Shown here piece after piece: positions 29,901-50,860 of a stretch of 64,000 nucleotides of DNA; position 1 is the first letter of the stretch; every line of letters begins with the position of its first letter. Made by a program: the position numbers and the translations under genes. This stretch comes from Mytilus californianus. Its lineage: Eukaryota. The stretch lies in the NCBI RefSeq assembly GCF_021869535.1, contig NW_026262581.1:97588001-97652000 (forward strand), read 5' to 3'. The notes under the pieces are model-generated. The model was not told the origin of the DNA, did no database searches, and worked only from the letters and a program-made list of their open reading frames with translations.

Positions 29901-32900
29901 ACAGTAACACTGTAAGGACATGTACACCATGTATTCTATAAACATAATATGGTTTCTTTTTACTAATAGTATCTGAGAAATTGACCTTTTTACAAAAACT
30001 TAACATAATAAGCCATGAAGATCCTGGGAAGGTCAGACTGACATGTACACCACACAATCATTTTACACCACATACAGTTAACCTTTCATTAACAGTAACA
30101 AGAATCAGACCTTATCATGTTGATCAATACACCATGAATATGAGGTCAGGTCAAATAAGTCCTGTCCTTCTGATGTATACACCTAATAATCATTCTATAT
30201 ATTGTACCATTTATATTTGACCTATTTTTGTAGTATCAGAGAAACTGACCTAATCACAAAAACATAGTGTTTATTGATGTGTCATTAAATTTAGGTCTAC
30301 TTCATATCAACTATTTCAAAGGACCATGTCCACCTTACACCACCCTTGCAGTCAATTTATATAGTTTCTATTCATAAATGTATCAAATTTTTTCATGCAG
30401 TCAGTGAGCTAGGAAATTGAAATAAAGGAGAATAAATATATGACAATATGACAGATGGAGGAAACTTCAGACTATAAGGCATCTGTATCTAAGATGTGGA
30501 TTATTTAGCTTCTCTACCTTCTGAAATATAAAGCTTGATAAAAAAAGTTCATGTTGATGCCCCTGCCAGATAAGCATCCCTATATCTTGCCTTCTGTGAC
30601 ACAGCAATAAGGGGTCAGACTGAATATATAACAAGGTTTTTAATTTAAAGGTGCATAAATGGTTATGACACTAGTATTTGATATGCTTCAGTGAGTATCT
30701 ATCTAAATGATAGTAAGGAAAGTTGATGTCTTAGTTGATACTTTTTTTTCTTGGGACTGTTTTTAACTTTAAAGCAATCACATTTTTATCAAATATTTTA
30801 TTTTCAGTGAGGAAAGTCATATTAATTTAACAGTGGGGACAATCCAAGTAAAAGAAGGTCCTCATTTTTATTCTTACTTTACTTCTCTTAAACTTAAAAT
30901 AAGACATAATGTACTTAATTCATTCAGTAATCTCCTTCAAGTTTTAATAATGAATGATAGAATGTAATTATAAATTACAAACCTGAAGATGCAGCATCAA
31001 ATTGATCACAGTTTTTAATCTTCTTCACTTTAGGGTCTTTTCCTCTGGCATCAATAACTACAGTCCCTACACCAGCACCTGACTGGGCCAAAAATATTGT
31101 TCCAGGGCCACCAGGTCCAGCTAAAACGTAAATATAAAAATAAATGAATGTGGTATGATTGCCAATGAGACAACTCTCACTAGAGACCAAATATTGTTGA
31201 ATTAACAACTATAGGTCACTTTACAGCCTTCCACAATGAGCAGAACCCATACTGCATGGTAAGCTATAAATTAATGAGTATAAAGTATACATATGTTCTA
31301 TAACTGTTTAGAGCTCCAGATAAGCTGCGTATTTGCGTGATCACGCAATACAAATAATTAAAAACCCAATGCAATTGCCCATTGTAGGGTTCAATAACCC
31401 AATTAATTCAAAGGAAAACCCAATTATATGCCAAAACCATGAGTTCTTAACGCTTTTATTCGCTATCGTTTGCGTTATTAACCCTTATCTGATTACAGTC
31501 GTCGCGTAAATCTATTTTTATAATATTTATAATTGGAAATGTCCTTTCGTTCTTAAAATAGAGCCCTGCATCAAGTAGCTGTAATGGGTCCCTGTTGGAA
31601 TTTTCCGTTGCTCAATAGGTACACGTGTTTATGAAAACATTTCGATCTTCTCGGCGTTTATCCAATTAGCGTGTGACATGGTGTCATATTTTTTCGAATT
31701 GCTCGGGATTTATCATAACATACAATGAATTAAAACGAAAGTAAATGTCCGATAAAAATATTGAATAGAAGCATGTTTTCGGCTTCCTTTTGATAGCTGA
31801 GGGAAAGTTATGATGATAACAAGACTCAGCTAGTGATTTTAGGAAGCGTCCATTGAACGCACGGGCGTGTTTGAAGGTACGAGAACATTGCTATAGAACG
31901 ATAAACACGGGGTTTCGTCAAAAACGAAATCAGTTGGAAAAAGTGAAAGGCCAAATCAATAATGACATGATATGTAGTTGGAAAGCGTCGGAAACCAAAA
32001 GTTCTGATAAGGGACAACTTAACCCAGATTTATGTAAATTTAAATAAACAAAAACAGTTTATATATTTTTTTTTCATTTTAGTTGATGAATGAATACACA
32101 TATCCGTTTTTTACGTCAAATTATGCAGCTTGACACTTTCTTTGTTCTGGTCTAATTGTTCTGGATGCTTAAGATAGTTGTCTTATTGGCAAGTGCAGTA
32201 TAACATTGTCATTTATTTACTTGATGTTGCAGAATTATTTGTAAATCTAAGTTGAATGTGGTCTCCATCATTAAACCACCCTATAAATCTCAAGGTTTTG
32301 GGGTATATCTTAAATCTGGGAACTACTTTTTATTTTTATTAAAAAGTAGATCTGGCAAATAGGTGAAAGGACTGGCAAAACTTTCTTACAGCACCTAAAT
32401 TTCACATATATTACATAAAAATCTAAACACTTAACCACACCTACCCCAACTATAAACTGTAGGGTGATCATATGGGATCTAGAAAGGCAATTAGTTACTG
32501 TCCAACTAGTGACACCAGCTGCAGTTTACATAAGTTTTGAGAAAATACAAAACTGACAGAACGTTTAAAACGGGACACAAATTAAACGTACAATTGCTCG
32601 TCAGTGAATAAACCAAATAAAACAGCTAAGCACATATACAAAGAAAGAAACACATTTAAGATGGAAACACATCTGTGGTTGATATAATGTGATTATAACA
32701 TGCCTAAATATTCAATATTGTGTTGATGAAAAAACCCAATACATTAAGGAGCTTGGTGGTGAAAAACCCAATTTGATATTTGCTTGAGGGGTGAATTGGA
32801 ATTGATAATGCAATTAAAAAACTTTATCACCCAATAACATAAAAAAAATGGTGGGTAAAAACCCCAATTTGTGAATTCTTATCTGGAGCTCTGACTGTTA

Positions 32901-35900: not shown

Positions 35901-38900
35901 GTATGCATTTTAAAAACTACCTCAAGAATAAAAGCAAGAGGAATACACATGCAGCGAAATTTTTAATCCTGTAAGACATGTATACATACAACAGGTGTAA
36001 ACTTTGCGGAACTTTTTGTATAACGGGCATTGTTTAGAAAATACTAGCTACATAGTTGTCGGTACCACCACCATACCGTATACTCGCCTTGAGGGAAAAA
36101 AAAGCATAATCCCTTTAGGGTTAACAAAAAAACTTGAACATTATTATTTTCCGCTTCGCCTCAAAGCACACATCTTACTAGAACGAAGACTCTTCAACTC
36201 GTATTGATCAGGAATTATGACTGTTGCCTTGTGAACTAGTTAAAAATTTACTAAGTATGTAGGTCTTGACAACACGAATAGTTCATTTTCACATCAGGTC
36301 AACGGATTCTCGTCCTGGTGTCATGTAATATTTCAGTGTTACCGGACATTAATAACCATTCAAACAATCAATAGTTTCCGTATACTAGTAGATGAGAAGT
36401 TGATACTGCTGTTATAAAAAAAGTACACATTTTCAAGTACATGTATTACGTTTTTATTTATTTTACAAAAAAACATCTTGTATATAGATTCGATAATTCG
36501 AAGTCGTTTCTGTATGGACCGGCAATACGAATGGTTGATTGTAAAAGCATTTAAATAAATTGTTCATTCTAACTCGTTTTACTGGACTATTTAGTCGTTC
36601 GATTTTATAATGAATTCGCTGTCCGAGTCGGACACTAAGCTGCTGATTTTTTTTCGAAAGATACATCAAACTTTTAATACACGTATCTTCACTGTTATCA
36701 TCTAGATATTGTATTTGTTAATTAACAAACCCAGATCATGAAAAAGATCGTGATCAATTTAAAGTACCATTCCCTATGAAAATGTTCATTAATTTCAACT
36801 TCGAGAATTCCTAACTGCGTAAAATTAGAAATTCCTATCTCTCTCTTGTAGAGCTTACCCACAAATGTTTTAAACATCTAAATACATATGTTAAGCAAAA
36901 TATTGGAGAATATTGGAGAATGTGTCCACCAAGTATTTGTTATCCAATGATGTTTATGCTAACAGAAACTCCACATATAGTATTGTGTTTATGTTTATTA
37001 TTTGTTTTTTATACATCTACTTTGCTCAATACAAATACTAGCATATGAAACAAATCTCCATGATTTTAAAAGCTCTCACGGCGTATAAAAACGCAAACGA
37101 CAATGTTTAGTCTTCATTCTACTCGAAGTTAAACAAATAGATGACAAAAAAAACACAACAAAAATGTACAAGTTTTATTACGGTTGTGATTGTTTTGAAA
37201 CGCTTTATATGCGGACCTTCCGGGGGGCTTCGCCCCCCTGGCCTCCTACCAGGGCTTTGCAGTGGACCTACTGGGGGCCTTAGGTGGCCCCCAGACCCCT
37301 CGCCCTTTAGTTTGTGACTCCACTTCATTAAGAAGGTAGCTACGCCCCATAAATCTATTGACAGCATTTTTTTTTATGAAAGTTGAATATAATGTTTATA
37401 TCTGCAATTTTTGCAAAAGTGATGCAGACGCAAAAGAAACAAGTGTTATGTGCAGTTCATGTCTGCAGTGGCAGCATCTTTCTTGTGCCAGACTACAACA
37501 TGCACCAAAAGCAAGGCACTGGTTTTGTAACACTTGTAAAGCATTTTGAGGTTGTTGAATGTTACTTTTTATTTCAAAACTAATAGGATATTTTTATTAA
37601 AAGTTTTAATATTAGAATGTCGATTTTTTATATGGGTTTGCATTCTTTGCTTAATGTGTATTATTTTATTTTTTTTAAAGACATATTTTTAGAGACTTCC
37701 TGTTAAAGTAAAGAAAATTAATTTTACTATTTATGCATTTTTAAAAATGTTTTAAAAAAGACATATTTTTAGAGACCTCTTCTTAAAGTAAAGAATATCA
37801 ATTTAAATATGCACGCTTAGTATAAATGTTTTAAAGAAGACATAGTTGTTTAGAAATTTCTTATTAAAGTGTATGTTTCTATATTTTTTCTATTCTGAAA
37901 ATCTTAATTAAAACCGGCAAAATAGCAAAACTTTATATAAATCGTTATTTTGCTGGAGCCGACAAAATAGCGCTAAGGAGTCTATTTTGCCGGAGCCGGT
38001 AAAATAGCACCTAAGAGGCTATTATGCCGGAGCCGGCAAAATAGCCACTGCCTTTAAAAAAATTCCTAGTTTTAGAAAGGAGTCTTTCTCCCTTCTCTAA
38101 CACTTTTATAGCCTTTATTTTTTTCATATTTCGAAACGATGAAGATGTACAAAGTTGTTAATTGATCAATTATGTTGAAGTGTATAAGGCAAGAGCGAAT
38201 TTGAACGGTGTAGTATAACTGAGGTGTTATGCACACCTTAGTTATGCATTACCCAGATTATGACACAAACAGGTCTCTGGTAATAACATATATATTTTGC
38301 CTATGTTATGTGTTAAAACATATTGTTGTCACTGATTTGTTTGAAGCTTTATTTGCACTAATGCAATATCACAGAATCTAGGACTATTATGCTGACCCAG
38401 ACAGAATATTACACGCTAAATTTTTAAAAGTATGTCCTATGAGAAATAGTATATGTTGCTATACCATAAAACAGAAAATGCCCCGGAACAAAAACCGTAA
38501 AATCAAATTCTGATTAATGAGATATCAATCCCGTCGCAATATTCAATATTATATATATATATATATAACAAAATACACACAGCCGAATAGATAGAAGCGG
38601 CAGACAATCTGAATTATTGCGAGTTTTATCAGACTAGTAAACTTTCATTTTTCATATCTAGTTGAAAATCTGCAATCACGTAAACTTTAATATGCAGATT
38701 AGACTGGTTATATAAAATAATGTTATACATGCTTACCTGTTGTTGTGCTGCTACAGGTTGTTGGTGGAACCGATACAGTACCTGTAATATAAAATATGTT
38801 AATCGTCAGTTTCCTGATGCACAGGTCGATCACAAACGATAGCGAACACACTTAATAGTGTTTAAGTTGAGTAAAATTCTCGATTAAACTAATTTTCTAT

Positions 38901-41900
38901 TCAATTTTAATATTCAATGACACAGTCAATCATTGCTGGGACTATTATACTAATTAGTATAATAGTCCCAGATCATTGTTATTATTTTTTTTCATGAAAA
39001 CGATTCAAACATATGGAAGAAGTCAGCTCCGACTATAAAGATAACGCAAAGAAATTCTGGTCTTATATCAAGAGCAAAGGTCAAGAATGGACAGGAGTGG
39101 CACCGTTAAAAAACAAAATGGGATTTCTGCAAAGTTACAACAAGAGCAAAGCTGACATTCTAAACGACCAATTCCAGTCAGTATTTACCAAAGAAAACCT
39201 TAATAACTTCCCAGATAAAGGAAGAAGTCCATACTCCACCATGAAGGCCATAAAAATTAGCACCAACGGAGTCCACAAATTGTTAAAAAACCTGAAACCT
39301 CATAAAGCTACTGGTCCTGACTCAATACCATCCTTTATACTTAAAGCAGCAGCAGAACAACTTGCTCCTATACTCACAGACCTATACCAAGCATCATTGA
39401 ACACTGGCGAAGTCCCGCAAGATTGGAGAGATGCCCATGTAGTTCCACTTTTCAAAAAAGACGAAAGACACTTAGCATCTAATTACAGACCAGTATCTCT
39501 AACTTCCATCACATGTAAGGTCTTAGAACATATTGTACATAGCAACATCATGGACCACTTTAACAAAAATGAAATACTAACTGATGCACAACACGGATTC
39601 CGCAAAAGACGATCATGCGAATCCCAACTCATCATAACCATCAACGACATTGCATCAAAATTAAAAAAGCAGCAGCCAAGTAGACATCATCCTGCTAGAC
39701 TTTGCAAAAGCATTTGACAAGGTACCACATCACCGCCTACTACACAAGCTGGCATACTATGGCGTCAACCCCAAAACCAACAAATGGATTCGCTCCTTCC
39801 TACATAACAGGAAGCAGAGCGTAATACTAGAGGGAGCCGTCTCCACACAAGTACCAGTACTCTCTGGTGTACCCCAAGGCACAGTCCTTGGTCCATTACT
39901 GTTCCTGGCCTACATTAATGACATGCCAGAAACAGCATCTACATCAGAGACCAAATTATTCGCGGATGACAGCCTTCTCTTTCGTACTATCACCAACTAA
40001 TCTAATTAAAATATAGATCTCGGATTTCGTTATACTACGTTATACTACATACGAAGATCTAACAAGTACCCTACAAGGTTTCACTTTTGTGACCTTATAT
40101 AACGATATATTTGACCCCAGAAAGTATTTATATCGACCAATCAGAATGCTCCTTATAAACGCGACCTAGGAACATGTTGAAGATGGCGACGTAGAAATGG
40201 AAAAACAACATAGAAAATGCATTAACTGAAATTTTGCCTTAGTACAAAGTGAAAGAATTGAAATTTGAGAAGAGACAAATTTTGGAAATCAAAGATTGCA
40301 TGGTCAGGCTTCCAACATGCTTCAAACGGGCTATGGAAAGAGTTTACATACCAGATTATGGCAGATATCTGCTACCCGATAATCAAGTCTGCATTCAAAG
40401 GTAAATTCTCGAAAATAGAGTATTAAAGGTTGACATTTTTCTATCATTGGGCAACTTCTCGAGTGTTTATTAAAAAAAATCTTTGTGGAGGATTCACAGT
40501 GTACTTTAAAAAAACATGACAATATCCCAGAAAATACATTGCAACTTGCAAGTCTTCATTCTCCTACCAAAAAATTATAATTTACAAAGTCAATGAAGAT
40601 ATGGGATCAGATAAATCTAAATTCATTGGTAATAGTATATAAATCATAATGTCATCTTATTAATGATATTCTACTGTGTACTTGCAAAGATATACATGTA
40701 TACTTATGCCAGCACATGCAGAAGAAGTTTTAATATCAGCATACTTTTCTGTCACACACTGATACATGTTGATATCATGTGGTGCTCCAGATAATTGTTA
40801 GGGGAAATTTTCTGCCAAGAAAGAAATTAATTGTTCACTATTCTTGGACTCGGCTACAGTGGGTCAGAATGGCAATTAGTGTTTCAGTGTTCATTAAATA
40901 TTAGTTTAATGCTTTGTGAGAAAAATAACTTCATCCTGTTTATGTACATATAAAAAAGAAGATGTGGTATTATTGCCAATGAGACAACTCTCCACAAGAG
41001 ACCAAATGACACAGAAATTAACAACTATAGGTCACCGTACAGCCTTCAACAATGAGCAAAGCCCATATCGCACAGTCAGCTATAAAAGGCCCCGAAATGA
41101 CAATGTAAAACAATCAAACGAGAAAAACTAACGGCCTAATTTATGTACAAAAAAAAACAAACGAATAACAAGTATGTAACACATAAACAAACGACAACCA
41201 CTGAATTACAGGCTCCTGACTTGGGACAGGCACATACATACAGAATGTGGCAGGGTTAAACATGTTAGCGGGATCCCAACCCTCCCCTAACCTGGGACAG
41301 TGGTGTAACAGTACAATATAAGAACGAACTATAAAAATCAGTTGAAAGAGGCAAAAAGTGTTACTTTAACCGTTCCAGAACAAATGGTATAATTGCTGAA
41401 TTTTTCATTCCATTCTCTAACTTTAGTTTGCCTCAACCAAATGTTATGAAACTTAAACACAATACTTATTACCAAAAAAACTCAGATCAAGCACAAATTT
41501 GGGTAGCATCACTTTTACCGTTCTTCAGTTATGTCGTTTTATAACTTTATATGATCTGCAAGAGTGGGCATCATCTGTGTCCTGTGGACACATTCCACAT
41601 TTATTGTAGTCTTTTATACTCAAATATTTAGCTTTAACTACATGATTGAGTAACTTTGCAGAGGCGTATTTAGAGGGGGAGCACAGGGGGCTCAGGCCCC
41701 CTTTTTTGGAAAAATTTGGTTGTTTATATAGGGAATCACTGAAGCATGGCTGTACAGGCCCCCATTATGAAGAAAATTTCTGGGTCCGCCACTGCTTTGT
41801 TTTCATTTGTAACATTACTAGTATAAATAATTTTGAAGACTTGATTAAGTAATTATGCTCTTGACTGATAGAATACTCTATCTTTAAATTCAACATGTCT

Positions 41901-44900
41901 AATACATATACTTGATCAATATATAGAACAAGACAGTCGAGGCTATCTCTATCATAGTGCATACATGTATGTTAAATTGTTCAGAAAACAACCAACCATC
42001 AAACAAAATCAATAGGTATCTTATAAGATTAATGTCTGGAAATGATGATGCTAAACAAAAAGTAAAAAATGTGAAATGAAATGAAATACAAGTTTAAAGA
42101 TTTGTGTACAGATTCTGATAATAAATACATGTATGTACAAATTTGATTAGGGAATCCACACCTCAAGGACTAATCCCAAAAAGGATTACTCAAGGGCCAG
42201 TGTTTTTATTTCCCCAAAAAAGGTTCAAAGATAAGAAGATGTGGATCCTAGAAATGGATTCACAGTGTCAATTTATAAATTTACTTTTAGATAACCTACA
42301 TGTATATCTGTAAGTAACATTTATTTAATAAAACATTCTGTCATTAACCAGAGGAACATATCAATTAAAATGTGTTTTAATAAACACTAGTATCAAGTAA
42401 CAGGGTATGTACATGTAGGTAGGGAAAACCTAAACAAACATGCATGTACATTTTTTCTTCATCTTTTAGTCTGGAAAAGCTAGTAATAATTATTAAAGAA
42501 AAAAATTAAATGAGTTCCTCTGAAACGGATGTTAAATAATCTTAAATAAGCTTTATAATGGAGTCAGCATTGTTTTGAAATCAGAATATTCCATAAATAT
42601 ATTTAAATTGATATTTCACATGTTTCAGGAGCAGACATTCTTCCCTGGTCTATATAGCTTCATTGAAAGGAATCAGACACAGAAAGTTTGGGGAAATGAA
42701 ATTGAGAGTCACTGTGAATAATTCACACACATGCTAGACATAAAGAAATGGCCAGACACAGGCTCAGCTATAGAATCTGTATCAACTGGAAGCAACAGCA
42801 TTTGCATCAGAAAACTAAAAAGGATGTGAAAAACATGAAACATGCATTTGGAAATGTTCAGCCGCCAAACAAATAGATATGCCAGGAAATGCAAATTGTT
42901 TGCTAATATAAATGTCAGTGATGTCTGTACAAAAGCAAAGATATAAAAGCCTTTTTCATTTATACATGTAACAGTCATATACAATACAGATTTAAGACCA
43001 TCAGACAATCTTTAAATCTTTGGAAGCCACAGTACCTAGTCCAAGACATTCCATATTTTCAACTCGTTATGAAGACATATTTGACCAATCTGGTTTCCAT
43101 TTATAGAAGTTTAAAAATAAGTTCTACATGTACATGACATGATGATCACCAGCAATGAAGGTGGTATAGGATATAATATTCAAAGTAGAGAAGTATAAAG
43201 TGAATTTGAACCTCACACCATAATAGCATTCTGCACATTTTGGATCACATATGGATCAAGCTGTTGTACTTGTGAACTAAAAGATTGTTGCTTGGTTGTT
43301 GTCAGGTACATTGTACATGTTGACAGTGCTATACGTCTATTAAATAAAATGCAGTTCAGAACAGTTATATTTTAGTAATAGATAGATTTCTTCTGTCTTT
43401 ATTTGAACGGATAAACCAGATAATTACAAAAAAAATTTCTGACAACTATGTCTGTTCTGGAACTGAAGACTACCTTCACTTTTTGTATCTTCCTTGTTCA
43501 TTTTCCTCCAGATAAATTACTGACTATCATCACCATGAGGCTTATAACATGTATAAGTAGGCTTAATTCCTCCAAGGTCTCCAGTTATGTCCTGTCTGTG
43601 ACAAAAGTTTCAGAATACAAGACATGCAAGACATGAAATGCTAATCGGACAACAACATTTACTATTTATATGAAGTTTTATATTTCAGAGGGTAGAAATC
43701 ATGGATTTGTCATACTTAAAATCATAATCATGATAATGTATAAGGAATCCTTATGTTTAGAAGTTTCTGTCAAGACATATGTCCATTGTCCTTATTCCAT
43801 TTTCATTGTTCAGTGCTCCTTAAAAAACTACATGTGTAGTGATTTTATCAAGTGAATTTGTGGCATATTATAAGTAATACGATATTTGGTATACAAAGGT
43901 TTACATGTGTTGTCAGACGGGGTTCAACTTGTCTCTCAATTTTTTGTCGAGCCCCGGGTTCTCATTAAGGCGAGTCCTGGACTCATCATAATCAGTCTGG
44001 ACTCATCATTTTCAAAACTTGCGAGTCCCCAAGATGCATGAAAATTGTAAAATGTTGTATCAACTGAGCACATACATGTATATCACCATTTTATCACAAA
44101 AGTTAAAAAATAATCAAAATTTTGTGTAATTAGGGATAGTGATGCGGCGGCGTTAACTCACTTCTTAAAAGCTTAATATTGCAGAAGGTAGAAGATCTGG
44201 ATGCTTCATACTTTGTATATAGATGCCTTATGATATGAAGTTTCCGTCTGTCATATATGTCTATTGTCATTGACCTCATTTTCATGGTTCAGTGACTACT
44301 TGAAAAAAAAGTTCAGAATTTTTGTAATGTTAATTTCTCTCTTATTATGAGTAATTGGATAACTATATTTGGTATGTGCGTACCTTGCAAGGTCCTAATG
44401 CCTGTCAGACAGTTTTCATTTGACCTCGACCTCGTTTCATGGATCAGTGAATAAGGTTAAGTTTTCATGGTCAAGTCCATATCTCAGATACTATAAGCAA
44501 TAGGTCTACTATATTTGGCGTACATGTATGTAATGATTGTAAGGTGTACATGTCCAGCTGGCAGGTGTCATCTGACCTTGACCTCATTTTCATGGTTCAG
44601 TGGTACTAGTTTAGTTTTTGTGTTTTGGTCTGTTTTTCTAATACTGTATGCAGTAGGTCAACTATATTTGGTGTATGGAAATATTTTACAATGTACATAT
44701 CAGTCTGGCAATCAGTCTGGCAGGTATTATTTGACCTTGACCAAATTTTCACGGTTCATTGCTCAATGTTAAGCTTTTGTGTTTTGGTCTGTTTCTCTTA
44801 AACTTTAAGCAATATGTCAACTATATTTGGTGTAAGGAATGATTGTAAGGTGTATGCATGTATGAATGTCTGGTAGGTATCATCTGACCTTGACTTCATT

Positions 44901-47149
44901 TTCATGGTTCATTGGTCCATATGGAATTTCCATGGTTTGGTCTGTTTGTTTTATACTACAAGCAATAGGTCATCTATATTCTGTGTATGGAATGATTGTA
45001 TTAAAGGTGTACATGTATTTACGCCTTGGTTTATCTGACCTTGACCTCGTTTTCTTGGATCATAAATGTTAATGTGATACTTGTAGTAAAACTTTATAAG
45101 TAGGACTATCAACATAAAATCAATGGTCAGTATAGTAGGCGAGACATTTCAGCGTGTGCACTCTTGTTTCAACTTATAAGTCTACAGATATCTAAATAAA
45201 AAAATAAGGTATATACATTAGGTAAAAATAAAATCAAACAAAAGACGGTGTTCATGTGACCCCAACCTCATTTTACCCATCAGTGATTAAGGTTATTTTT
45301 TTTGTGCAAATTAATATATATTGTGGTTAATTCCATTTCTCAGATTCTACACAATGTATATAAAGCAGTAGGTCAAAGTTTACATATGAACAAGAAGAGA
45401 TACTATACATGAAACGTTTATATATATGTTAATGATGATGGATAGCTGCTTACAGTCCAGTGGCAAATTAATATGCATATTCAGGACAAGAATATGTTTA
45501 TGTGATGTGAATAATAACCCTGCTTTGTTATAGACCGACAGCATTTAAAATAGCAAAAAATAACTAAATGACATCTAGAATGAAACCTACATGTATATAT
45601 AAGGCTTCAATAGAAGGAAAGGCAATTGTCTATGCAATATGTCAAGCTCTACTCTTTAATGTGTCTATAAAAGTAGTGAATAAATTCAGAAGAAATATCT
45701 TGTTCATTGTGTCTGTGATAATCATTCATGTACATGTACATCACATCACTGCATGTACAAAAATGTACCACATCTATTTTATATAGATCTGTCATATGCA
45801 TTTAATACACAATTCTGAAAATAAAAAAATAAAAACTATAGGCCATGCAACATGTACTACAAGTATACAACAGGGTTTATACTTGGTACAGGCACATGAA
45901 ATGTGATTGAATGTAATGAAATAGTTTTTGTGTCACCTGAGACCATTGTTGCAAAATGTGACACTTAGGGATTACAATCAGCATAATTGTGCAGCAGCAT
46001 AAACTATTTGAATAAAGTTTGATATTTCAGAAGATAGATGACCTGGATGTTTTATACCTTGTACACAGATACATTTTTGTGTACCTTATATGTGTAGTCA
46101 CTAAGTTTCTGTCCAACAAATGTCCATTGTCCTTGACCTAATTTTTATGGTTCAGTGACTGCTTGATTAAAAATTATGCTTTTTTTTCTCATTTGAAATT
46201 TTCACTTTACAAATGTATTATCTCAGATTCTATAAGCAATAGGTCAACTATATTTGGTGTATAGAATAATTGTTAGATGTACATGTGCATTTTGGACTAG
46301 CAGTTTTTATCGAACCTTGACCTCTTTTTCATGGTTCATTCTTTAGTTGTTGTGGTTAAGTCTATTTCTCAAACTAGCAATAAGGCCTCTACATTTGGTG
46401 TATGGAATGATTTTAAGGTGAACATGTCCAACACAGGCATTTTTTTCTGACCTTGACCTTTTTCATGATTTATTATTTGTGATTTTGGTCTATTTTGCAG
46501 ACACTTTGAAGCAATAGGGCCACTATATTCTGCATATGACTTCTGCAGCCCTTCTATGTCAAGTATATATTGATCTTAAAAAATGACAGGTTATTGATAA
46601 TTTAGTTTATTGCTTTCAAATTTAAAATTTGATTAAAAGGTAAAAAAAGCTAGAATTTTCATTTTGGACTAAGGGAGCTACCATTTGATTTTTATGGGGG
46701 GGGGGGGGGGGGGCTAGGATGAAAAATTTTGTCCTGCATTTTTTTTAGTTGTAATATCTGTCCTGCCTTTTTATTTTTCACTCTATTCGGTCCTGCCTTT
46801 TTTTTAAGTTTATCCTTTTTTTTTTTTACCTAAATTGTCATCCTGAGGCCTTAAAAAAGAATAGGGTTTGTTTGCCCTAACCCTATCTACCCATATAATA
46901 GCTGCCTACTCAAAATCTTTTATTGTTCTGATGTGAAATTTTTTTTTTTTTAATCAGATAGGCATGAAGACTAAAAATCATCTGACACTTCAATTACTCT
47001 TTAGAGAAAAAAAAGAAAATGCCTACCTACCTACCCACTGTCTCTACCTTTGGGTAGGGTTTGGGCAAACCAAAATATTTTTAAGTGTGGCTTGACTTTT
47101 TTTTTTGCAAGTGTCTCATCCTGCCTATTTTTTTCAAATTTCATCCTAG

Positions 47150-47180
<31 letters not shown>

Positions 47181-50100
47181 ATCAAATGGTAGCTCCCTAT
47201 ACAACTTTTTTCAAATTAACTTGGATTTTAATAAAACTCTACAGCTATCTCAATCATATATTGATCTTACAAAATGCAAGGTTATTTGGAAGTCAGGTTT
47301 ATTGGTAACTGTAAATGTAAGGATTTATTTAAAAGGTAAAAAAGCAAGAATTTTCAGTTCGAGCTAAATTCGCAGCTATCTAAATCATATATTGATATTA
47401 CAAAATGCCTGGTTATTAGTCCCCTACCGTCAAAGTCAAAGGGGACTTTAGGTTTGCACTCTGTCCGTCTGTCTGTCTGTCCATCTGTCAGTCTGGCAAA
47501 TCAGTTTTCCACACTTTTTTTCTTCGTTCTTGAAGATATTGATTTGGTTTTTGGTGTATTGTTTTATCATGACAAGTTACAGATCATGTTCGAATTTTAT
47601 TTATCAATTATTATGTCAATGATAGACTAGGATTGGTTTTTTGTATATATGTATCTGCTTCAGCATGGGAATTGTTTAGGAAATACACATGTATTTAAAT
47701 ATATAGCCTACTACCTAAGATTTTTTTCTTACTAGATATAAAATAAAAGAGCCACCCCCCCCCCCCCCCCCCCCTGGATCCGCCACTGACAGTGCTATAG
47801 TGTACAGTTTAAAAGTGTTTACTGAATACTGTACTCTTTAATTTCCACGATTACGATCCGACCTCAAGTCATAAAGCATATGAGGCACATCTGAAAACTT
47901 TGACAAACGTCACATATTTCAAAAATTCATGGCTATAGTTACAATATGACGACGAAAGAGATTTAAAAACTATTTCCAAACGATTAACAATCGAAACGAT
48001 AAATTTTAAGTCCCATTGTTTTTATTTTTGGATACCCTCGGGACCTTTCAATGAACCTCATTCAAGTAAATATGTTCCGCGTGCGCTGTTCAGATTGGAT
48101 AACTAGAATTCTGATTGGTTGAAAAAGTCACATGCAAAATCCTTCAGAAGTGAAACCTTATACGGGTAGTTGTTAGATCTTCGTATGTAGTATAACGTAG
48201 TATAACGAAATCCGAGATCTATATTTTAATTAGATTGTATCACCAACCAAGCAGACAGTGAACTTCTCCAGAAAGACTTATCAGCATTGGAAGACTGGGA
48301 AAACAAATGGCAGATGAGTTTCAATGCCAAAAAATGCCTTGTCATTAGAATATCACCAAAAAATCGACCAGTGATACAAACATCATACCAACTACACGGT
48401 CATACTCTAGACACAGTGGAAGCGAGCAAATATCTTGGAGTAACCATCAGCAACAACCTAACCAGGGACAAACACATAGACAATACAGTAGGCAAAGGTA
48501 ATAGAACGTTGGGATTTATACGTAGAAATCTCAAAGGCTGTACAAAACCTGTAAAGGCAGCTGCATACGTATCCATGGTAAGACCTGCAGTGGAATATGC
48601 ATGCACAGTATGGGACCCAACAACCCAAAATAAAATCAAGGCAATTGAACAGGTACAGAAAAGAGCAGCACGATTTGTGAATAACAACTACACAGACCGA
48701 ACACCTGGCTGTGTCACAAATATGGTCAAAAATCTAAAATGGGAAAGCTTAGAAGAACGGAGGAAAACAAACAGACTATGCATGCTATTCAAGATCCAGC
48801 ATGATCTTATAGACATAGACCGTCACCAATATTTAACTCCAAATGATAACCGGACCAGAGGTAAAAACCGCTTCTACCAAGAAAGAACAAGTACAGACGC
48901 CTACGGCCAATCTTTCTTCCCGAGGACCATCAGGGATTGGAACAACTTACCAACATCAGTTTCATCGGCCAACACCGTTGAGGGATTCAGAGCTGCCCTT
49001 AAGGCATGCTCTGAAAGGAAGTAGGAAACACCAGTTGTACATAATTTTAATTGTATAATATTGCGAACGTTTTAAATGTAATTTGTAAATAGCCAAGAGA
49101 GAACTTTCTGTGTTGCCTGACACTGCGTAAAGTTTTCGCGCGGAACCAATAACATTCAGTTTTGAATCCGGTTCCTTACCTGGAAGAAGAAGAAGAAGAA
49201 CATAAAAAAATAAATATACCATAATTGTTGTATCCATACAGCTTTACCGACATACTAATACCATTATTCCACGTCTGAGGATAAAACCGTATCTTTGATG
49301 TGTAGATTGGCGCAACAAGGTCGTTGTAAACGATGCCGTTGTTATCAGTATTACCGGAAAACCCATTTGATGGATATGATAGAGTAACCTGGAATGTATG
49401 TTAACGTATTTTTCTCATTTGGTATACAAATAAAGTAGGAATAAACTTTAAAATAATTTCAATTAATAAAGATATCTAATTTGTTCACTATTTTTTTCAT
49501 TTATTTGTAATTAAATCTCTGTCGTTAGCCCGGACAAAATATCACTTTTTGCCAAATATGTTAAAATAAAATGATACTGAACAGTTGAATTTATCATCAA
49601 CCAATCAAATAATATTATAGAAGAGATATTTTAAACTTTTCCACGTCTTTTGATTGGATCCTGGTCTAATTTCTGCTTCGATTAATATTTTCAAAACGAA
49701 ACCAACATGGACTAATGTTGAATATGATTATTGGTTTTCGTATCATAAAAAAAATGAAATTATGTTTGATTTGTTTTTGTGTTTGTTTTTTCTCTCTTTC
49801 TATTTTTTCCCCATAGATTTCACCGGAATATGTTAAACTGAGAAATTTGAAATAGGATATTCTAAGACCACTTCTTTATTTAAAATATGATATTCTATAT
49901 AAGACTAAATCTTTATCGAAGTTCACTTGTTTCATACCCATGCTGAACTTGTGTCGTTGTAATATTGGATTTTAAACGTCTTAATCCACATATTATAGGA
50001 CTGATGTCCTCTAGTGGCGACTCGAGTAATCCATTTGGGTGAAGATAATGAAGCTTGTAACCACTGGTCTGTGTTGAAATAATATGCCCGCCAGGAAATA

Positions 50101-50860
50101 GTTGAACTTTTTGTCATGTCACCGTAGGAAGCAGCTGCATGCCTTGCTGATGAAGCTGTGGTGGACTGCAGTGTTAGTTGATTTACATCAGCTACGAAAA
50201 GTAAGGCGTTATTAAATGTATAGTAATGATAAGAAAATTTTTCAGATTAAGAAAAGCGAATGGATATTCTGTTTCCTCTTGTGTCATGATGAAATGATGT
50301 TATGATTTACCTCATGACAAAATTCTGATATTAAAAATGAAAGTTTATTTAGATCTGCCAAAGAATCATTACAAATCATATTCGTGTTTGTTTTTTTGTT
50401 TTTTTTCTAATCTTCTGAATTAACCAAATAGTTCAATTATTTCATAATTGCTTACTGGAACATTCTCCACCATCTGCAAATATGTCACCACTAAATGTTG
50501 CTGAAACTCTGTGAACAATAGAAATACGTCCACCTCCGCCTCCTCCGCCCGTCCCGCTTCCTGTTCCACCACGTGCTGTAACCATTCCACTTCCTTTAAA
50601 ATAATCTGTGTCTATGTAAATACTTCCACCGCTGCCACCACCACAGTTACTACCGTCAGCGTTACCATTAGCAGATACCAATCCATCAACCCTGACGTCA
50701 TCTGTAGCTTTCAATGTAATAACACCGCCTCCTTTGCCACCGGTAGAACAACCACCTCCACTTCCAAAGTCACTTGGTTTTTCGATGCCACCATATGCTA
50801 CAGCTTCGTTGGACTTTAGATATATACCAGTTTTCATGCCACCACGTCCACCATAAGAAC
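1..50860 (-). CDS. Giant Gly-rich repeat extracellular protein with an inserted F5/8 type C (discoidin) domain; 27 exons, about 3260 aa in window, partial at both ends
   Basis: Manual exon chaining on the minus strand: every junction has AG/GT and matching phase. Recurrent motifs GAGHGGxGG, YGxxxxPxxxGSxGG, GGGSGGSIxI, GGGGGRI, GGPGT, TLxIDN, GDxSGxxH. Many NxS/T sequons. No start or stop codon found in the window. Confidence 0.9.
3423..4133 (-). CDS. Exon 26: YHFDELQIYG...MIGDRSGAIH...DLPF...GAGHGGSGGRGY
   Basis: ORF 3391..4161; acceptor TTGCAG, donor GTATGT; phase 1 to 1. Confidence 0.92.
4355..4990. repeat. Degenerate about 138-bp tandem repeat (about 5 copies) in the intron between exons 25 and 26
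   Basis: CCTAGCA(T/C)AAAAAGATG-like units near 4368, 4505, 4643, 4780 and 4930. Confidence 0.6.
5460..5603 (-). CDS. Exon 25: YDHTTLLLNN...KAWFLPEHGKHTFA
   Basis: Acceptor TTGACAG, donor GTATGT; phase 1 to 1. Confidence 0.87.
6598..6775 (-). CDS. Exon 24: GYGEFQSIGG...GAGSGGRISMEF...GSPGTSFFHHK
   Basis: ORF 6569..6802; phase 0 to 1; donor GTATAT. Confidence 0.9.
7377..7651 (-). CDS. Exon 23: AGHGGRGGRG...APYG...GGRGGG...GGGSGGSINIDINNIK
   Basis: ORF 7284..7493 extended; phase 1 to 0; donor GTTAGA. Confidence 0.9.
7839..8050. mobile_element. Tc1/mariner-type MITE (TA|CTGTGGATTCATT...AATGAATCCACAG|TA)
   Basis: TIR plus TA flanks; a second copy lies at 29697-29904. Confidence 0.8.
8149..8311 (-). 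CDS. Exon 22: ANKLWVQGGGHV...IVDDLG...GYSSSTGGS
   Basis: Phase 0 to 1; donor GTAAAA. Confidence 0.87.
8799..8994 (-). CDS. Exon 21: GSLGVVDMTIGNAC...FNTLTVKAGGEVTV...SSMAIT
   Basis: ORF 8727..8972; phase 2 to 0; donor GTGAGT. Confidence 0.87.
9355..9543 (-). CDS. Exon 20: PFQLKSLKFEGDKTGVLHVGPGQ...VYVYHGGTLIL
   Basis: Phase 2 to 2; donor GTGAGT. Confidence 0.87.
10465..10670 (-). CDS. Exon 19: DTITDVINRTLILDNNG...RTWI...FENLRIQGKANLAL
   Basis: Phase 0 to 2; donor GTAAGT. Confidence 0.87.
10894..11046 (-). CDS. Exon 18: VNGGNGVSLGAGGGGRMMIYY...GGAGTIYLQ
   Basis: Phase 0 to 0; donor GTTAAT. Confidence 0.88.
11548..11880 (-). repeat. 116-bp tandem repeat (about 3 copies) of exon-17 3' end plus GTAAGT donor
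   Basis: Donor-adjacent positions 11780, 11664 and 11548. Confidence 0.92.
11780..11937 (-). CDS. Exon 17: GGMMVIT...AAGGSGGCIYITTDSIEGKGTLQ
   Basis: AG at 11939-11938, donor GTAAGT; phase 1 to 0. Confidence 0.85.
12088..12347. repeat. 260-bp foldback palindrome
   Basis: Arms nearly perfect around a loopless centre at 12218/12219 (AAGAGAT|ATCTCTT); 33-bp bulge in the left arm, 31-bp duplication in the right arm. Confidence 0.9.
12599..12688 (-). CDS. Exon 16: SLPGKEYGSLYGPCYFGSGGFGASKSYGS
   Basis: Within ORF 12462..12773; phase 1 to 1; donor GTACTT. Confidence 0.85.
13757..14276 (+). mobile_element. tRNA-derived SINE, about 520 bp
   Basis: A-box-like ..AGTAGTTAAG and B-box-like GGTTGGATTC in the head; central TACTTCAGCTTCTTCCACC core; (ATCAA)n tail. 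Confidence 0.55.
14705..16242 (+). mobile_element. Helentron/pearl-like non-autonomous element with about 8 x 166-bp internal tandem array
   Basis: GGCGGCC recurs at 15020, 15186, 15352, 15518, 15684, 15850 and 16016 (period 166). A (GAC)n microsatellite follows, then the hairpin AGCTCACTTGGCCC-TTT-GGGCCAGGTGAGCT at 16207-16237. Confidence 0.8.
16851..17175 (-). repeat. About 70-bp tandem repeat (5 copies) of exon-15 3' end plus GTAAGG donor
   Basis: TTTGACCTTAC at 16852, 16921 (degenerate), 16991, 17061 and 17131. Confidence 0.9.
17142..17352 (-). CDS. Exon 15: VQKSGHTG...SASGYGY...GGGYGGRGGANSAS
   Basis: ORF 17083..17358; donor GTAAGG; phase 0 to 1. Confidence 0.88.
17413..17618. mobile_element. 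TA-flanked MITE (CTGTTAATTCAGAAATT...); related copy at about 5712-5911
   Basis: Inverted ends CTGTTAATTC / GAATTAACAG with TA flanks. Confidence 0.65.
18111..18238 (-). CDS. Exon 14: ATLEFEESSNRNLTFSNFTVQNGGKLEL...YHLQ
   Basis: AG at 18240-18239, donor GTACTT; phase 1 to 0. Confidence 0.82.
18465..19942. mobile_element. 1478-bp P-superfamily-like non-autonomous element
   Basis: 29-bp perfect TIR CATGGAAGTATTATATTGACAGGAACTAC; 7-bp flanks ATAAAAC / ATGAAAC (1 mismatch). CATG termini and a 7-8-bp TSD are typical of P elements. Confidence 0.75.
20010..20585. mobile_element. MITE with AGGTCCAGTAAG / CTTACTGGGCCT ends
   Basis: Imperfect inverted termini. Confidence 0.55.
20736..20955 (-). CDS. 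Exon 13: STRYRRANVTYHPFIY...GDLAHLLVST
   Basis: ORF 20722..20931 extended; phase 0 to 1; donor GTAAAT. Confidence 0.85.
21752..21936 (-). CDS. Exon 12: AVAFLLP...YDFTMVEIYGGAHL...GDDTGHLH
   Basis: ORF 21731..21955; phase 1 to 0; donor GTTAGA. Confidence 0.88.
22166..22345 (-). mobile_element. SINE 3' fragment with (CAAT)n tail
   Basis: Minus strand reads GGTTCTCTCCGGGCACTACGGCTTCCTGCACC, a common invertebrate SINE core, followed by CAAT repeats. Confidence 0.55.
22531..22591 (-). CDS. Exon 11: VTEPSGTTADISHFNTYKST
   Basis: 61 bp; acceptor TTTGTAG, donor GTAAAT; phase 0 to 1 is required to bridge exons 10 and 12. Confidence 0.75.
22775..23448 (+). mobile_element. Helentron/pearl-like element with about 3 x 169-bp array and (GGAC)n, inserted into an interspersed repeat
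   Basis: GACCTTGACC at 22891, 23060 and 23229; sub-terminal inverted GGGCCCCGCTG / CAGCGGGGCCC. The host repeat continues on both sides. Confidence 0.78.
23866..23963 (-). CDS. Exon 10: GSGYEPGGPGIMYFHGKTSRNLRVDNKCQKPM
   Basis: Within ORF 23770..24042; phase 1 to 0; donor GTAATT. Confidence 0.85.
24606..24789 (-). CDS. Exon 9: VTNAGGGSGGSLYV...GGGGSGGRINFFF
   Basis: AG at 24791-24790, donor GTTAGT; phase 0 to 1. Confidence 0.88.
25243..25484 (-). CDS. Exon 8: Gly block GASGGSYGARGGRG...PYGSIF...GSGGG...GGRGGG
   Basis: Phase 1 to 0; donor GTAGGT. An alternative in-frame donor GTAATA 6 nt further would end the exon at 25237. Confidence 0.85.
26006..27041 (-). CDS. Exon 7: 1036-bp beta-strand-rich segment ending LDVSGGGYLNSKGT
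   Basis: ORF 25935..26987 extended to the acceptor (VATTYNKIRARY...); donor GTGAGT; phase 0 to 1. Confidence 0.9.
27258..28219 (-). CDS. Exon 6: 962-bp beta-strand-rich, non-Gly segment
   Basis: ORF 27246..28151 extended to the acceptor (AVAWINDDSF...); donor GTTTGT; phase 1 to 0. Confidence 0.9.
29697..29904. mobile_element. Tc1/mariner-type MITE, same family as 7839-8050
   Basis: TIR CTGTGGATTCATT, TA flanks. Confidence 0.82.
30983..31120 (-). CDS. Exon 5: GPGGPGTIFLAQSG...FDAASS
   Basis: ORF 30975..31208; AG at 31122-31121; donor GTTTGT; phase 1 to 1. Confidence 0.85.
31309..32893. mobile_element. 1.6-kb non-autonomous TIR element (YAGAGCTCCAGATAAG)
   Basis: Inverted ends at 31309 and 32893, ACTGTT on both flanks, subterminal AAAACCCAAT repeats. 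Confidence 0.75.
34162..34190. repeat. 29-bp hairpin flanked by 7-bp direct repeat GTCCTAC
   Basis: CAGAGACATATA-TGTAT-TATATGTCTCTG; GTCCTAC at 34155-34161 and 34191-34197. Confidence 0.8.
35234..37549 (+). pseudogene. Broken transposon-borne gene C-terminus: AT-hook-like KR(G)RPKG, VIGLP motif and PHD finger
   Basis: Frameshifted pieces ..KKR/RPKGFTQTVTCVIGLPKK..LVWFV../..EEEHVETSPE..DAWKS, then an insertion, then ICNFC..VMCSSCLQWQHLSC..WFCNTC (C4HC3 PHD spacing). Confidence 0.75.
35771..37350. mobile_element. Nested TIR element (CAGGGGCGTAGCTAC...GTAGCTACGCCCC) interrupting the PHD gene
   Basis: Inverted ends; AAATC repeated on both flanks (35766-35770, 37351-37355). Confidence 0.75.
38737..38781 (-). 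CDS. Exon 4: 45-bp Thr/Pro-rich linker micro-exon (GTVSVPPTTCSSTTT)
   Basis: Acceptor TTTTATATTACAG, donor GTAAGC; phase 1 to 1; joins in frame to exons 3 and 5. Because it is short, a chance match cannot be excluded. Confidence 0.6.
38936..38971. repeat. 36-bp perfect palindrome flanked by 7-bp direct repeat ATCATTG
   Basis: CTGGGACTATTATACTAA|TTAGTATAATAGTCCCAG; ATCATTG at 38929-38935 and 38972-38978. Confidence 0.88.
40183..40370 (+). pseudogene. Decayed N-terminus of a RecQ-like SF2 helicase inside the TIR element
   Basis: From ATG 40183: MAT*KWKNNIENALTEILP*YKVKELKFEKRQILEIKDCMVRLPT, then after a frameshift ..TGYGKSL.. and YQI. This resembles RecQ motif I (KD.xxxLPTGxGKSLxYQ). Confidence 0.6.
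40952..41350 (+). repeat. Abundant interspersed repeat family (GATGTGGTATGATTGCCAATGAGACAAC...); longest copy
   Basis: Same sequence at about 22705-23540 (interrupted), 29245-29690 (-), 31145-31265, 52960-53150 (-), 58970-59140 and 62990-63090. Confidence 0.8.
44130..45169. mobile_element. Helentron/pearl-like element with degenerate internal tandem units (inside the 8.24-kb element)
   Basis: Recurrent GACCTTGACCTCATTTTCATGGTTCA / ACTATATTTGGTGTA units; a degraded copy lies at about 46020-46550. Confidence 0.6.
46673..47197. mobile_element. PIF/Harbinger-like MITE copy with nested insertion
   Basis: Same TIR as 60447-60728. Confidence 0.75.
49220..49388 (-). CDS. Exon 3: C-terminal half of discoidin domain
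   Basis: VTLSYPSNGFSGNTDNNGIVYNDLVAPIYTSKIRFYPQTWNNGISMSVKLYGYNNY, matching FxGNxD...PI...IRxxPxTW...ISMxxxLYG. Acceptor TTCCAG, donor GTATAT; phase 0 to 1. Confidence 0.85.
49938..50191 (-). CDS. Exon 2: N-terminal half of F5/8 type C (discoidin) domain
   Basis: Translates DVNQLTLQSTTASS...SWRAYYFNTDQWLQASLSSPKWITRVATRGHQSYNMWIKTFKIQYYNDTSSAW, matching the discoidin pattern WLQxxL...xxxVATxG...WxxxxKIxY. Acceptor TTTTCGTAG, donor GTATGA; phase 1 to 0. Confidence 0.85.
50456..50860 (-). CDS. Exon 1 (most 5' found): Gly-rich block SYGGRGG...GGGSGGSIYI...GGGGGGGRISI...DGGECS
   Basis: ORF 50442..50837; acceptor AG at 50862-50861; donor GTAAGC after 50456; phase 1 to 1. Confidence 0.9.

What the first reader, a model, noticed from the sequence alone, without database searches (positions are those of the whole stretch)
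38737..50191. Discoidin (F5/8C) domain inserted mid-repeat as a symmetric phase-1 cassette that can be skipped in frame
Seen in sequence: exons 2 and 3 encode a complete F5/8 type C domain and exon 4 a Thr/Pro linker. Together they sit between ...DGGECS (exon 1) and GPGGPGT (exon 5), two motifs only a few residues apart in the other repeats. The flanking introns are both phase 1, so splicing 50456 directly to 31120 gives DGGECSTGPGGPGT, a normal-looking repeat. Established knowledge: 1-1 modules are the classic unit of exon shuffling in metazoan extracellular proteins, and F5/8C domains bind glycans, phospholipids or collagen. Inference: a ligand-binding module was grafted into a loop of the scaffold and may be alternatively spliced. 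The two Cys around it (ECS, TCS) might pair. The second discoidin exon and the micro-exon are not in the supplied ORF track.
Basis: partly seen in the sequence, partly recalled or inferred. Interest (0 to 1): 0.72.

Follow-up and report, generated by a model that had tools for sequence, protein, structure and literature searches.

The report
Discoidin domain nested in beta-helix rod
A ligand-binding 'discoidin' domain really is spliced into a surface loop of the first unit of a giant secreted mussel rod protein, but every bivalve relative examined has it too, and nothing yet shows that it is ever skipped.

Summary
On the minus strand, exons 50191-49938 and 49388-49220 match the two halves of Pfam F5_F8_type_C (profile 3-77 and 82-124 of 127). 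A 45-nt Thr/Ser/Pro micro-exon follows at 38781-38737. All outer introns are phase 1. The cassette lies between scaffold-model positions 144 and 149, a loop that five other units of the same gene encode without an intron. A 3410-nt transcript contig from a congeneric mussel joins Gly-rich exon > discoidin exon 1 > discoidin exon 2 > micro-exon, so the cassette is expressed as part of this gene.

The same order (signal-peptide exon, Gly-rich exon, two discoidin exons) occurs in the tandem paralogue 586 kb away, in the Mercenaria mercenaria locus (RefSeq XP_045165772.2 joins it as far as the first discoidin exon) and in five further mollusc-like loci. Where I read the junctions, the phases are the same. 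The insertion is therefore old and, in this sample, universal. No skipped isoform was seen, and the test was weak. The proposed Cys pair is not conserved.

The scaffold is an unnamed beta-helix unit (AF2 pLDDT 91.8). EGF, VWD and laminin-G-like coding lies downstream on the same strand. This scan already described the paralogue (s1-302543).

The parts
50456..50860 (-). Phase 1 at both ends.
   Evidence: Sequence read. Scaffold HMM positions 2-144. The organism B transcript contig covers 50862-50459 and joins it to the signal-peptide exon upstream and to 50191 downstream.
49938..50191 (-). Discoidin exon A: N-terminal 60% of the F5/8 type C domain. Phase 1 in, phase 0 out.
   Evidence: Pfam PF00754 profile 3-77/127, E 1.6e-8, 35.2 bits against a gathering score of 28.2. 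Spliced to both neighbours in the organism B contig. Homologous exons in L002, L003, L005, L007, L017-L019.
49220..49388 (-). Discoidin exon B: C-terminal 40% of the F5/8 type C domain. Phase 0 in, phase 1 out.
   Evidence: Pfam PF00754 profile 82-124/127, E 2.3e-5. Joint 49938>49388 in the organism B contig. Homologues found.
38737..38781 (-). 45-nt micro-exon: Thr/Ser/Pro linker GTVSVPPTTCSSTTT. Phase 1 in and out.
   Evidence: Sequence read. Past 49217 the organism B contig runs on with 30 letters whose reverse complement matches this exon at all but 2 positions (loose ends).
30983..31120 (-). Exon that resumes beta-helix unit 1: (A)GPGGPGTIFLAQSG... Phase 1 in. The 3' end is inferred from a GT donor only.
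   Evidence: Sequence read. Scaffold HMM positions 149-191. An equivalent exon follows the discoidin exons in Mercenaria locus L007. The junction 38737>31120 was not seen in RNA.
38782..49219 (-). 10.4-kb intron between discoidin exon B and the micro-exon. It carries plus-strand retroelement debris.
   Evidence: The ORF at 39013-39717 (+) hits RVT_1 at E 2.6e-8. The ORF at 48287-49024 (+) has no Pfam hit.
3..25485 (-). Downstream beta-helix units 2 to 7 of the same gene. Unit exons fuse progressively; the last open frame (3008-3) runs off the window.
   Evidence: Gly-rich frames and HMM mapping. Exons 11046-10894 and 6781-6599, and the single-exon units 2975-1638 and 1622-393, cross model positions 144-149 without an intron.

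Best explanation
The stretch is the 5' part of a giant minus-strand gene for a secreted protein.

Layout of the protein:
- A signal peptide and a short cap, encoded just outside the window.
- A long run of roughly 410-430-residue Gly-rich units, each predicted to be a right-handed parallel beta-helix.
- Further downstream on the same strand, teneurin-type EGF arrays and VWD / laminin-G-like domains.

In the first unit only, a two-exon F5/8 type C (discoidin) domain plus a short Thr/Ser/Pro linker exon is nested in the loop between two beta-helix strands (...F.G.I.A.GG | loop | GG.GT.F...). The domain therefore buds sideways from the rod, about 240 residues from the mature N-terminus.

Shown:
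- Exon borders, phases and Pfam identity.
- The position of the cassette inside one repeat.
- Splicing of the cassette to the scaffold in a sister species.
- Conservation of the layout in the paralogue and in other bivalves.

Inferred:
- The cassette entered an ancestral gene as a class 1-1 exon-shuffling module, before the split of mussels and venerid clams and before the local gene duplication.
- It is normally included.
- It works as a ligand-binding head (glycan, lipid or collagen, as in other F5/8C domains) held at the free N-terminal end of a rigid rod.

In-frame skipping is possible on paper but has no evidence.
For: - Junctions and phases were read directly.
- Pfam PF00754 matches the two exons in complementary halves.
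- The scaffold HMM places the flanking exons at model positions 2-144 and 149-191. Five other units cross that point without an intron.
- One 3410-nt contig of run X3 (organism B, about 97% identical, depth 28) covers 50862-50459, 50191-49936 and 49386-49217, then continues into the micro-exon. It starts 14 nt before the ATG of the signal-peptide exon.
- The own-genome paralogue has signal-peptide exon, E1-like, E2-like and E3-like exons in the same order and strand.
- Phases 1/0/1 are conserved in L002, L003 and L005.
- Mercenaria mercenaria XP_045165772.2 joins signal peptide, cap, Gly-rich exon and discoidin exon A. Its locus also holds exon B and the resuming exon.
- Three more loci keep the order.
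- Differences between organisms A and B inside the exons: 6 synonymous and 5 non-synonymous in the Gly-rich exon, 4 and 3 in the discoidin exons, with no indel or stop.
- A scaffold unit folds at pLDDT 91.8 and pTM 0.91. The equivalent loop lies between strands 121-123 and 140-145.
- Its structural neighbours are almost all right-handed beta-helix proteins, Z 8-11.
- EGF_TEN, VWD and Laminin_G_3 hits lie downstream on the same strand.
Against: - There is no RNA evidence from the window's own species. Raw RNA run X17 (about 6% read) has no reads on the exons, and X1 and X2 contigs cross exon borders unspliced, like DNA.
- The junction 38737>31120 was not observed.
The beta-sandwich fold and its geometry on the rod are therefore assumed.
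- No ligand is known.
- The canonical terminal Cys pair of F5/8C domains is missing.
- Continuity of one gene from the beta-helix units to the VWD / laminin-G region rests on strand, order and one shared open frame (beta-helix to EGF, L009), not on RNA.
- Most related loci come from unnamed assemblies, so the taxonomic spread is known only for Mytilus and Mercenaria.
Confidence: 0.8

Rival explanations
1. The cassette is a regulated alternative exon block. Tissue- or stage-specific skipping (50456>31120, or partial skips such as 50456>38781 or 49220>31120, all in frame) gives rod proteins with or without the discoidin head.
For: All four borders are phase 1, so every skip keeps the frame. The full skip restores a loop of normal length, six residues against seven to eight in other units. 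Phase symmetry is kept in relatives.
Against: Only the inclusion form was seen, in one contig of one run. Phase 1-1 symmetry is the rule for exon-shuffled extracellular modules, most of which are constitutive. The signal-peptide exon and the Gly-rich exon are phase-1 bordered too. The cassette is present in every locus examined and shows no sign of relaxed constraint.
Confidence: 0.15
2. The discoidin exons are not part of the Gly-rich gene. They would be a separate nested gene or a chance ORF match inside a long intron.
For: Before testing: the exons lie in a 19-kb gap between Gly-rich exons, and the 10-kb intron holds retroelement debris.
Against: A single transcript contig joins Gly-rich exon, both discoidin exons and the micro-exon at GT-AG borders. 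A RefSeq model in Mercenaria makes the same join. The two exons match complementary halves of one Pfam profile. Eight other loci keep the order.
Confidence: 0.02
3. The nested domain is a conserved structural spacer that has lost ligand binding. It would be kept only because removing it would disturb folding of unit 1.
For: The canonical F5/8C terminal disulfide is absent. Discoidin exon A diverges faster than the scaffold exon: 49% against 80% identity to L003, and 39-40% against 60% to the paralogue.
Against: Core F5/8C positions are invariant across four distant copies (W33, R34, Q42, L44, G61, Y77, N78, W84). Fast change outside the core is also what ligand-binding loops show. The open frame is maintained across bivalve orders.
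Confidence: 0.1

Closest known systems
F5/8 type C (discoidin) domains: coagulation factors V/VIII C domains, neuropilin b1/b2, retinoschisin, CASPR2, Dictyostelium discoidin I/II
   Same: A profile of the four cassette copies matches these solved chains (best E 8e-7 neuropilin-2, 5e-6 CASPR2 and factor V). Pfam PF00754 covers the full profile over the two exons.
   Different: Here the domain is nested inside a loop of another fold instead of standing in a chain of domains. No Cys opens the domain in any of the four copies aligned. The window has Cys only in the flanks (ECS before, TTC in the linker), and the first of these is not conserved. No ligand is known.
Class 1-1 exon-shuffling modules of metazoan extracellular proteins (Patthy's rule; from established knowledge)
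   Same: The domain is encoded by exons whose outer borders are both phase 1. Neighbouring exons are also 1-1.
   Different: The module was placed within a repeat unit, between model positions 144 and 149, not between units. The intron pair exists only in that unit.
Bacterial beta-helix adhesins and autotransporter passenger domains (Vag8 7akv, UpaB 6bea, Ag43 7koh, tapirin 6n2c, Fap2 9qe7). Side domains budding from beta-helix turns, as in Hbp domain 2 or the P22 tailspike dorsal fin, are recalled from memory and were not tested.
   Same: The scaffold unit's best structural neighbours are these proteins (Z 8-11). A long beta-helix stalk carrying a binding module is the shared design.
   Different: There is no significant sequence or Foldseek match. 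This is an animal gene with introns, a signal peptide and EGF/VWD/laminin-G domains downstream. This is resemblance in design only, not family membership.
The paralogous giant beta-helix rod gene about 0.6 Mb away in the same genome (scan note s1-302543)
   Same: Same unit, same strand, same downstream domain types. Its 5' end has the same signal-peptide exon > Gly-rich exon > two discoidin exons.
Mercenaria mercenaria XP_045165772.2, named 'keratin, type I cytoskeletal 9-like'
   Same: A spliced RefSeq model of signal peptide, cap, Gly-rich exon and discoidin exon A, with about 50% identity in the Gly-rich exon.
   Different: The model is truncated: it stops in the intron after exon A. The name reflects glycine content only.

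Membership tests
Pfam PF00754 F5_F8_type_C | HMM match at or above the gathering score | tested here: met
   Exon A alone scores 35.2 bits against a cut-off of 28.2. Exon B alone scores 25.0 bits, E 2.3e-5.
Pfam PF00754 F5_F8_type_C | Coverage of the whole domain profile, in order | tested here: met
   Profile 3-77 lies on exon A and 82-124 of 127 on exon B, which are adjacent and co-linear. The split at profile position 77 recurs in L002, L003 and L005.
Pfam PF00754 F5_F8_type_C | Cys pair tying the N- and C-termini of the domain, as in the factor V/VIII C domains (from established knowledge) | tested here: not met
   No Cys opens the domain in any of four copies. The window has flanking Cys (ECS, TTC), kept in organism B, but the first is absent in five relatives. 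Many F5/8C family members lack this pair, so this does not exclude membership.
Pfam PF00754 F5_F8_type_C | Beta-sandwich (jelly-roll) fold with ligand-binding spike loops | not tested
   This needs the spliced sequence. The joined step was left out, and no natural full-length sequence of unit 1 was available by reference.
Class 1-1 exon-shuffled module | Both outer introns in phase 1, so the module is insertable and removable in frame | tested here: met
   Window. Paralogue L002 and relatives L003 (5' border only) and L005.
Alternatively spliced cassette exon | Both inclusion and skipping isoforms present in RNA | tested here: inconclusive
   Inclusion is seen in one organism B contig. There was no skip joint, but contigs drop minor forms, and the only raw RNA run of organism A had no reads on the gene.
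Right-handed parallel beta-helix (scaffold) | Predicted all-beta solenoid whose structural neighbours are beta-helix proteins | tested here: met
   AF2 pLDDT 91.8 and pTM 0.91 on a 48-sequence alignment. The top 50 VIA matches are almost all beta-helix proteins, Z up to 10.9. Foldseek gives nothing at E<1e-3.
Right-handed parallel beta-helix (scaffold) | Match to a named sequence family (Pfam Beta_helix, PbH1, G8 and the like) | tested here: not met
   No Pfam family at E<=1 for seven scaffold pieces, or at E<=10 for the two flanking exons.
Teneurin / tenascin | Teneurin-type EGF array together with the family's other hallmark domains (teneurin: type II membrane anchor and YD shell; tenascin: FN3 plus fibrinogen globe; from established knowledge) | tested here: inconclusive
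   EGF_TEN and EGF_Teneurin hits lie downstream. The other domains found there are VWD and laminin-G-like. No YD, FN3 or fibrinogen hit came up in the pieces scanned, and the 3' end of the gene was not reached. The UniRef name 'Tenascin-X' on sea-cucumber relatives appears to rest on the EGF repeats.

The most novel reading that the evidence does not exclude
The discoidin cassette is a switchable head. Regulated in-frame skipping would give giant beta-helix rods with or without a ligand-binding tip at their free N-terminal end. That would make this an animal counterpart of bacterial beta-helix adhesins whose binding module buds from the stalk, in a protein family with no name and no studied function.
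Probability: 0.12. Interest if true: 0.65.

Novelty: new variant of a known kind. Interest (0 to 1): 0.4.

Why it matters
Exon shuffling normally strings domains end to end. Here a standard 1-1 module sits inside a loop of a beta-helix coil, with introns that mark the site, and has stayed there at least since mussels and venerid clams diverged.

This gives a clean, datable example of domain nesting by exon insertion. It also gives the first functional handle on an unnamed family of giant animal beta-helix rod proteins: a discoidin domain suggests a glycan, lipid or collagen ligand that can be tested directly.

It does not, on present evidence, show a new regulatory mechanism.

Tried and rejected
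- **Pfam on scaffold pieces:** nothing found.
- **Read laying:** raw RNA run X17 of the window's species had no reads on the exons. The only reads fell on a repeat at 49100-49225. Runs X1 and X2 cross exon-intron borders unspliced, so they behave as DNA and say nothing about splicing.
- **Word search with the Gly-rich exon:** it returned only exon-sized ORFs from genomic contigs that read on into the intron. They were useful for showing a conserved exon end, but not for junctions or isoforms.
- **Profile search with discoidin exon A:** most top hits are unrelated multi-discoidin proteins. Among the best 150, only P0260 carried the Gly-rich motifs I screened for.
- **Upstream exon:** it is not in the window. 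It was found outside.
- **Foldseek against PDB:** no match at E<1e-3.
- **Paper searches:** Nothing on this family or architecture turned up.
- **Disulfide idea (ECS...TTC):** rejected as a conserved feature.
- **Separate nested gene:** rejected.
- **Joined-exon steps:** Pfam and structure prediction of the spliced cassette, and of the skipped form, were left out. Each exon was searched by reference.
- **3' end of the gene:** I did not reach it. Domains continue beyond C1:97430001, so a membrane anchor is neither shown nor excluded.

Full report
**What is in the sequence**

The window is AT-rich animal DNA (GC about 0.33, no N). It is G000:C1:97588001-97652000 of a 1.65-Gb genome.

A gene on the minus strand runs through most of the window. 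I read the relevant junctions base by base:
- The Gly-rich exon 50860-50456 ends ...FADGGECS plus one base, before GTAAGC.
- Exon 50191-49938 follows the acceptor ...tcgtag and ends in phase 0 before GTATGA.
- Exon 49388-49220 follows ...ttccag and ends in phase 1.
- The 45-nt exon 38781-38737 encodes GTVSVPPTTCSSTTT and is phase 1 at both ends, with donor GTAAGC.
- Exon 31120-30983 starts (A)GPGGPGTIFLAQSG.

Every coordinate in the finding is exact. The hypothetical join 50456>31120 gives a Thr codon and keeps the frame.

**Identity of the cassette**

- Exon 50191-49938 matches Pfam F5_F8_type_C at profile positions 3-77 of 127 (E 1.6e-8, 35.2 bits, gathering score 28.2).
- Exon 49388-49220 matches positions 82-124 (E 2.3e-5).
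- A profile of four copies of the first exon finds neuropilin, CASPR2, factor V/VIII, retinoschisin and discoidin I/II among solved structures.

The two exons therefore encode the complementary halves of one complete discoidin domain.

**Position inside a repeat**

The scaffold has no Pfam family. I aligned 48 copies of one unit from the window and from database relatives and built an HMM from the alignment.
- Mapped on the window, the Gly-rich exon covers model positions 2-144 and exon 31120-30983 covers positions 149-191. The cassette interrupts a single loop.
- Exons 11046-10894 and 6781-6599, and the single-exon units 2975-1638, 1622-393 and 398-3, cross that point without an intron.
- In those units the loop between ...GG and GG.GT... 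is seven to eight residues long. The skipped form would have six.

**The scaffold fold**

The unit window:393-1622 (minus strand) folds with pLDDT 91.8 and pTM 0.91 as an all-beta structure. The equivalent loop lies between strands 121-123 and 140-145. Foldseek finds no PDB match at E<1e-3. An exhaustive structural comparison returns almost only right-handed parallel beta-helix proteins: Vag8, tapirin, UpaB, Ag43, Fap2, tailspikes and pectinases, with Z up to 10.9.

**Expression and splicing**

One reads call was available.
- In run X3 (organism B, about 97% identical in the exons), a single 3410-nt contig of depth 28 lies on the minus strand as three pieces: 50862-50459, 50191-49936 and 49386-49217.
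- The joints correspond to 50456>50191 and 49938>49388. At the first, three letters differ, making ECS into ECL.
- Past 49217 the contig continues with 30 letters whose reverse complement equals the micro-exon except at two positions. So 49220>38781 is used as well.
- Upstream of 50862 the contig continues with letters that occur, without mismatch, at C1:97654490-97654519. That site is in an exon beginning MKGFLALIFLLLICVDFTKS..., a typical signal peptide. The contig starts 14 nt before that ATG.
- For the window's own species there is no RNA evidence. X17 (raw RNA, about 6% read) gave no reads on the exons, and X1 and X2 are unspliced.
- No skip joint was seen. However, contigs do not report minor isoforms, and the far side of the skip lay outside the stretch I could lay.

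**Conservation**

- The genome has only two signal-peptide exons of this kind. Each is followed on the same strand by a Gly-rich exon and the two discoidin exons. The second set, 586 kb away, shows 60%, 39-40% and 55-56% identity.
- A metagenome contig (L003/L004) has the Gly-rich exon at 80% identity and discoidin exon A at 49%, about 600 nt downstream.
- Contigs from three ENA assemblies (L005 and L018 from one, L017, L019) keep the order Gly-rich exon > exon A > exon B.
- Mercenaria mercenaria RefSeq XP_045165772.2 joins signal peptide, cap, Gly-rich exon and exon A. Its locus also holds exon B and the resuming exon.
- The phases 1/0/1 and the split at Pfam position 77 recur.
- Between organisms A and B the exons differ by 6 synonymous and 5 non-synonymous changes in the scaffold exon, and by 4 and 3 in the discoidin exons, with no indel or stop.

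The cassette is old and constrained, and it is present in every locus I could examine.

**The Cys pair**

The Cys of ECS is kept in organism B. In relatives it is replaced (DIS, DIV, LI, MA, LGG), and no copy has a Cys at the start of the domain. A conserved disulfide is therefore unlikely.

**Wider architecture**

- The window holds about seven units.
- More Gly-rich matches extend to C1:97479531 on the same strand.
- One open frame there passes from a Gly-rich unit into teneurin-type EGF repeats (L009).
- Further on lie VWD and laminin-G-like domains (L011-L013).
- This agrees with what the scan reported for the paralogue (s1-302543).
- Relatives of the unit occur in Dreissena, Pecten, Ruditapes, Nucella, a sea cucumber and an acorn worm.

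**Mechanism**

Shown: a discoidin domain is encoded within a turn of the first beta-helix unit and is spliced in.

Inferred:
- F5/8C domains have adjacent termini (established knowledge). One can therefore sit in a loop without breaking the helix and project sideways near the free N-terminal end of a rigid rod, where it would bind a ligand.
- The origin is most simply a class 1-1 exon-shuffling event in an ancestor of bivalves, before the local duplication.

**Verdict**

- Supported: the graft into a loop and the phase symmetry.
- Without evidence: alternative splicing.
- Not supported: the disulfide, and any idea that the insertion is recent.

This is a new variant of known things (a discoidin domain, 1-1 exon shuffling, a beta-helix stalk) in an unnamed family, and is of moderate interest.

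Noticed in passing
G000:C1:97654488-97654800 (-), = L008:1499-1811, about 2.5 kb beyond the window's high end: First coding exon of the gene: a signal peptide plus an approximately 84-residue cap, ending in phase 1. Only two such exons exist in the genome, one per giant gene.
   Followed up: yes
G000:C1:97430001-97480000 (-), loci L009-L013: Downstream on the same strand the Gly-rich units give way to teneurin-type EGF arrays, then VWD and laminin-G-like domains in very long open frames (up to 2363 codons). The 3' end was not reached, and continuity as one transcript is not shown.
   Followed up: partly
window 39013-39717 (+) and 48287-49024 (+): Retroelement debris inside the 10.4-kb intron. 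The first ORF hits RVT_1 (E 2.6e-8). The second has no Pfam hit but attracts RNA reads at 90-99% identity near 49100-49225.
   Followed up: partly
window about 31150-31260 (-), 40916-41131 (+), 52904-53150 (both strands): A short interspersed repeat recurs next to or inside the introns; the ORFs at 40916-41131 and 52904-53125 have similar translations (...QLSTRDQ...KLTTI...FNNEQ...). It was not classified.
   Followed up: no
L017:13565-20408 (-), ENA ERZ26273219 contig, just downstream of that orthologue's discoidin exon B: A run of minus-strand ORFs including a 1401-residue product with a weak Endonuclease_7 hit and a product with a DJR-like capsid domain (PF21738). This looks like a virus-like or Polinton-like insertion. 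Observed only.
   Followed up: no
one search hit list (P0111, P0116 and others): The Gly-rich half of the unit also matches large bacterial proteins (Verrucomicrobia and metagenomes) at 31-49% identity over 6-22% of the query. This could be shared ancestry of a beta-helix repeat or a glycine composition effect.
   Followed up: no
window 49938-50191 compared with 50456-50860: Discoidin exon A diverges faster than the neighbouring scaffold exon in every comparison: 49% against 80%, 39-40% against 60%, and 59% against 71%. This is compatible with changing ligand-binding loops, but no selection test was run.
   Followed up: partly
window 52140-52430: In run X3 other contigs touch 52140-52176 and about 52408-52426, with a back-joint and loose ends at depth up to 25. 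This is probably a repeat and was not explained.
   Followed up: no
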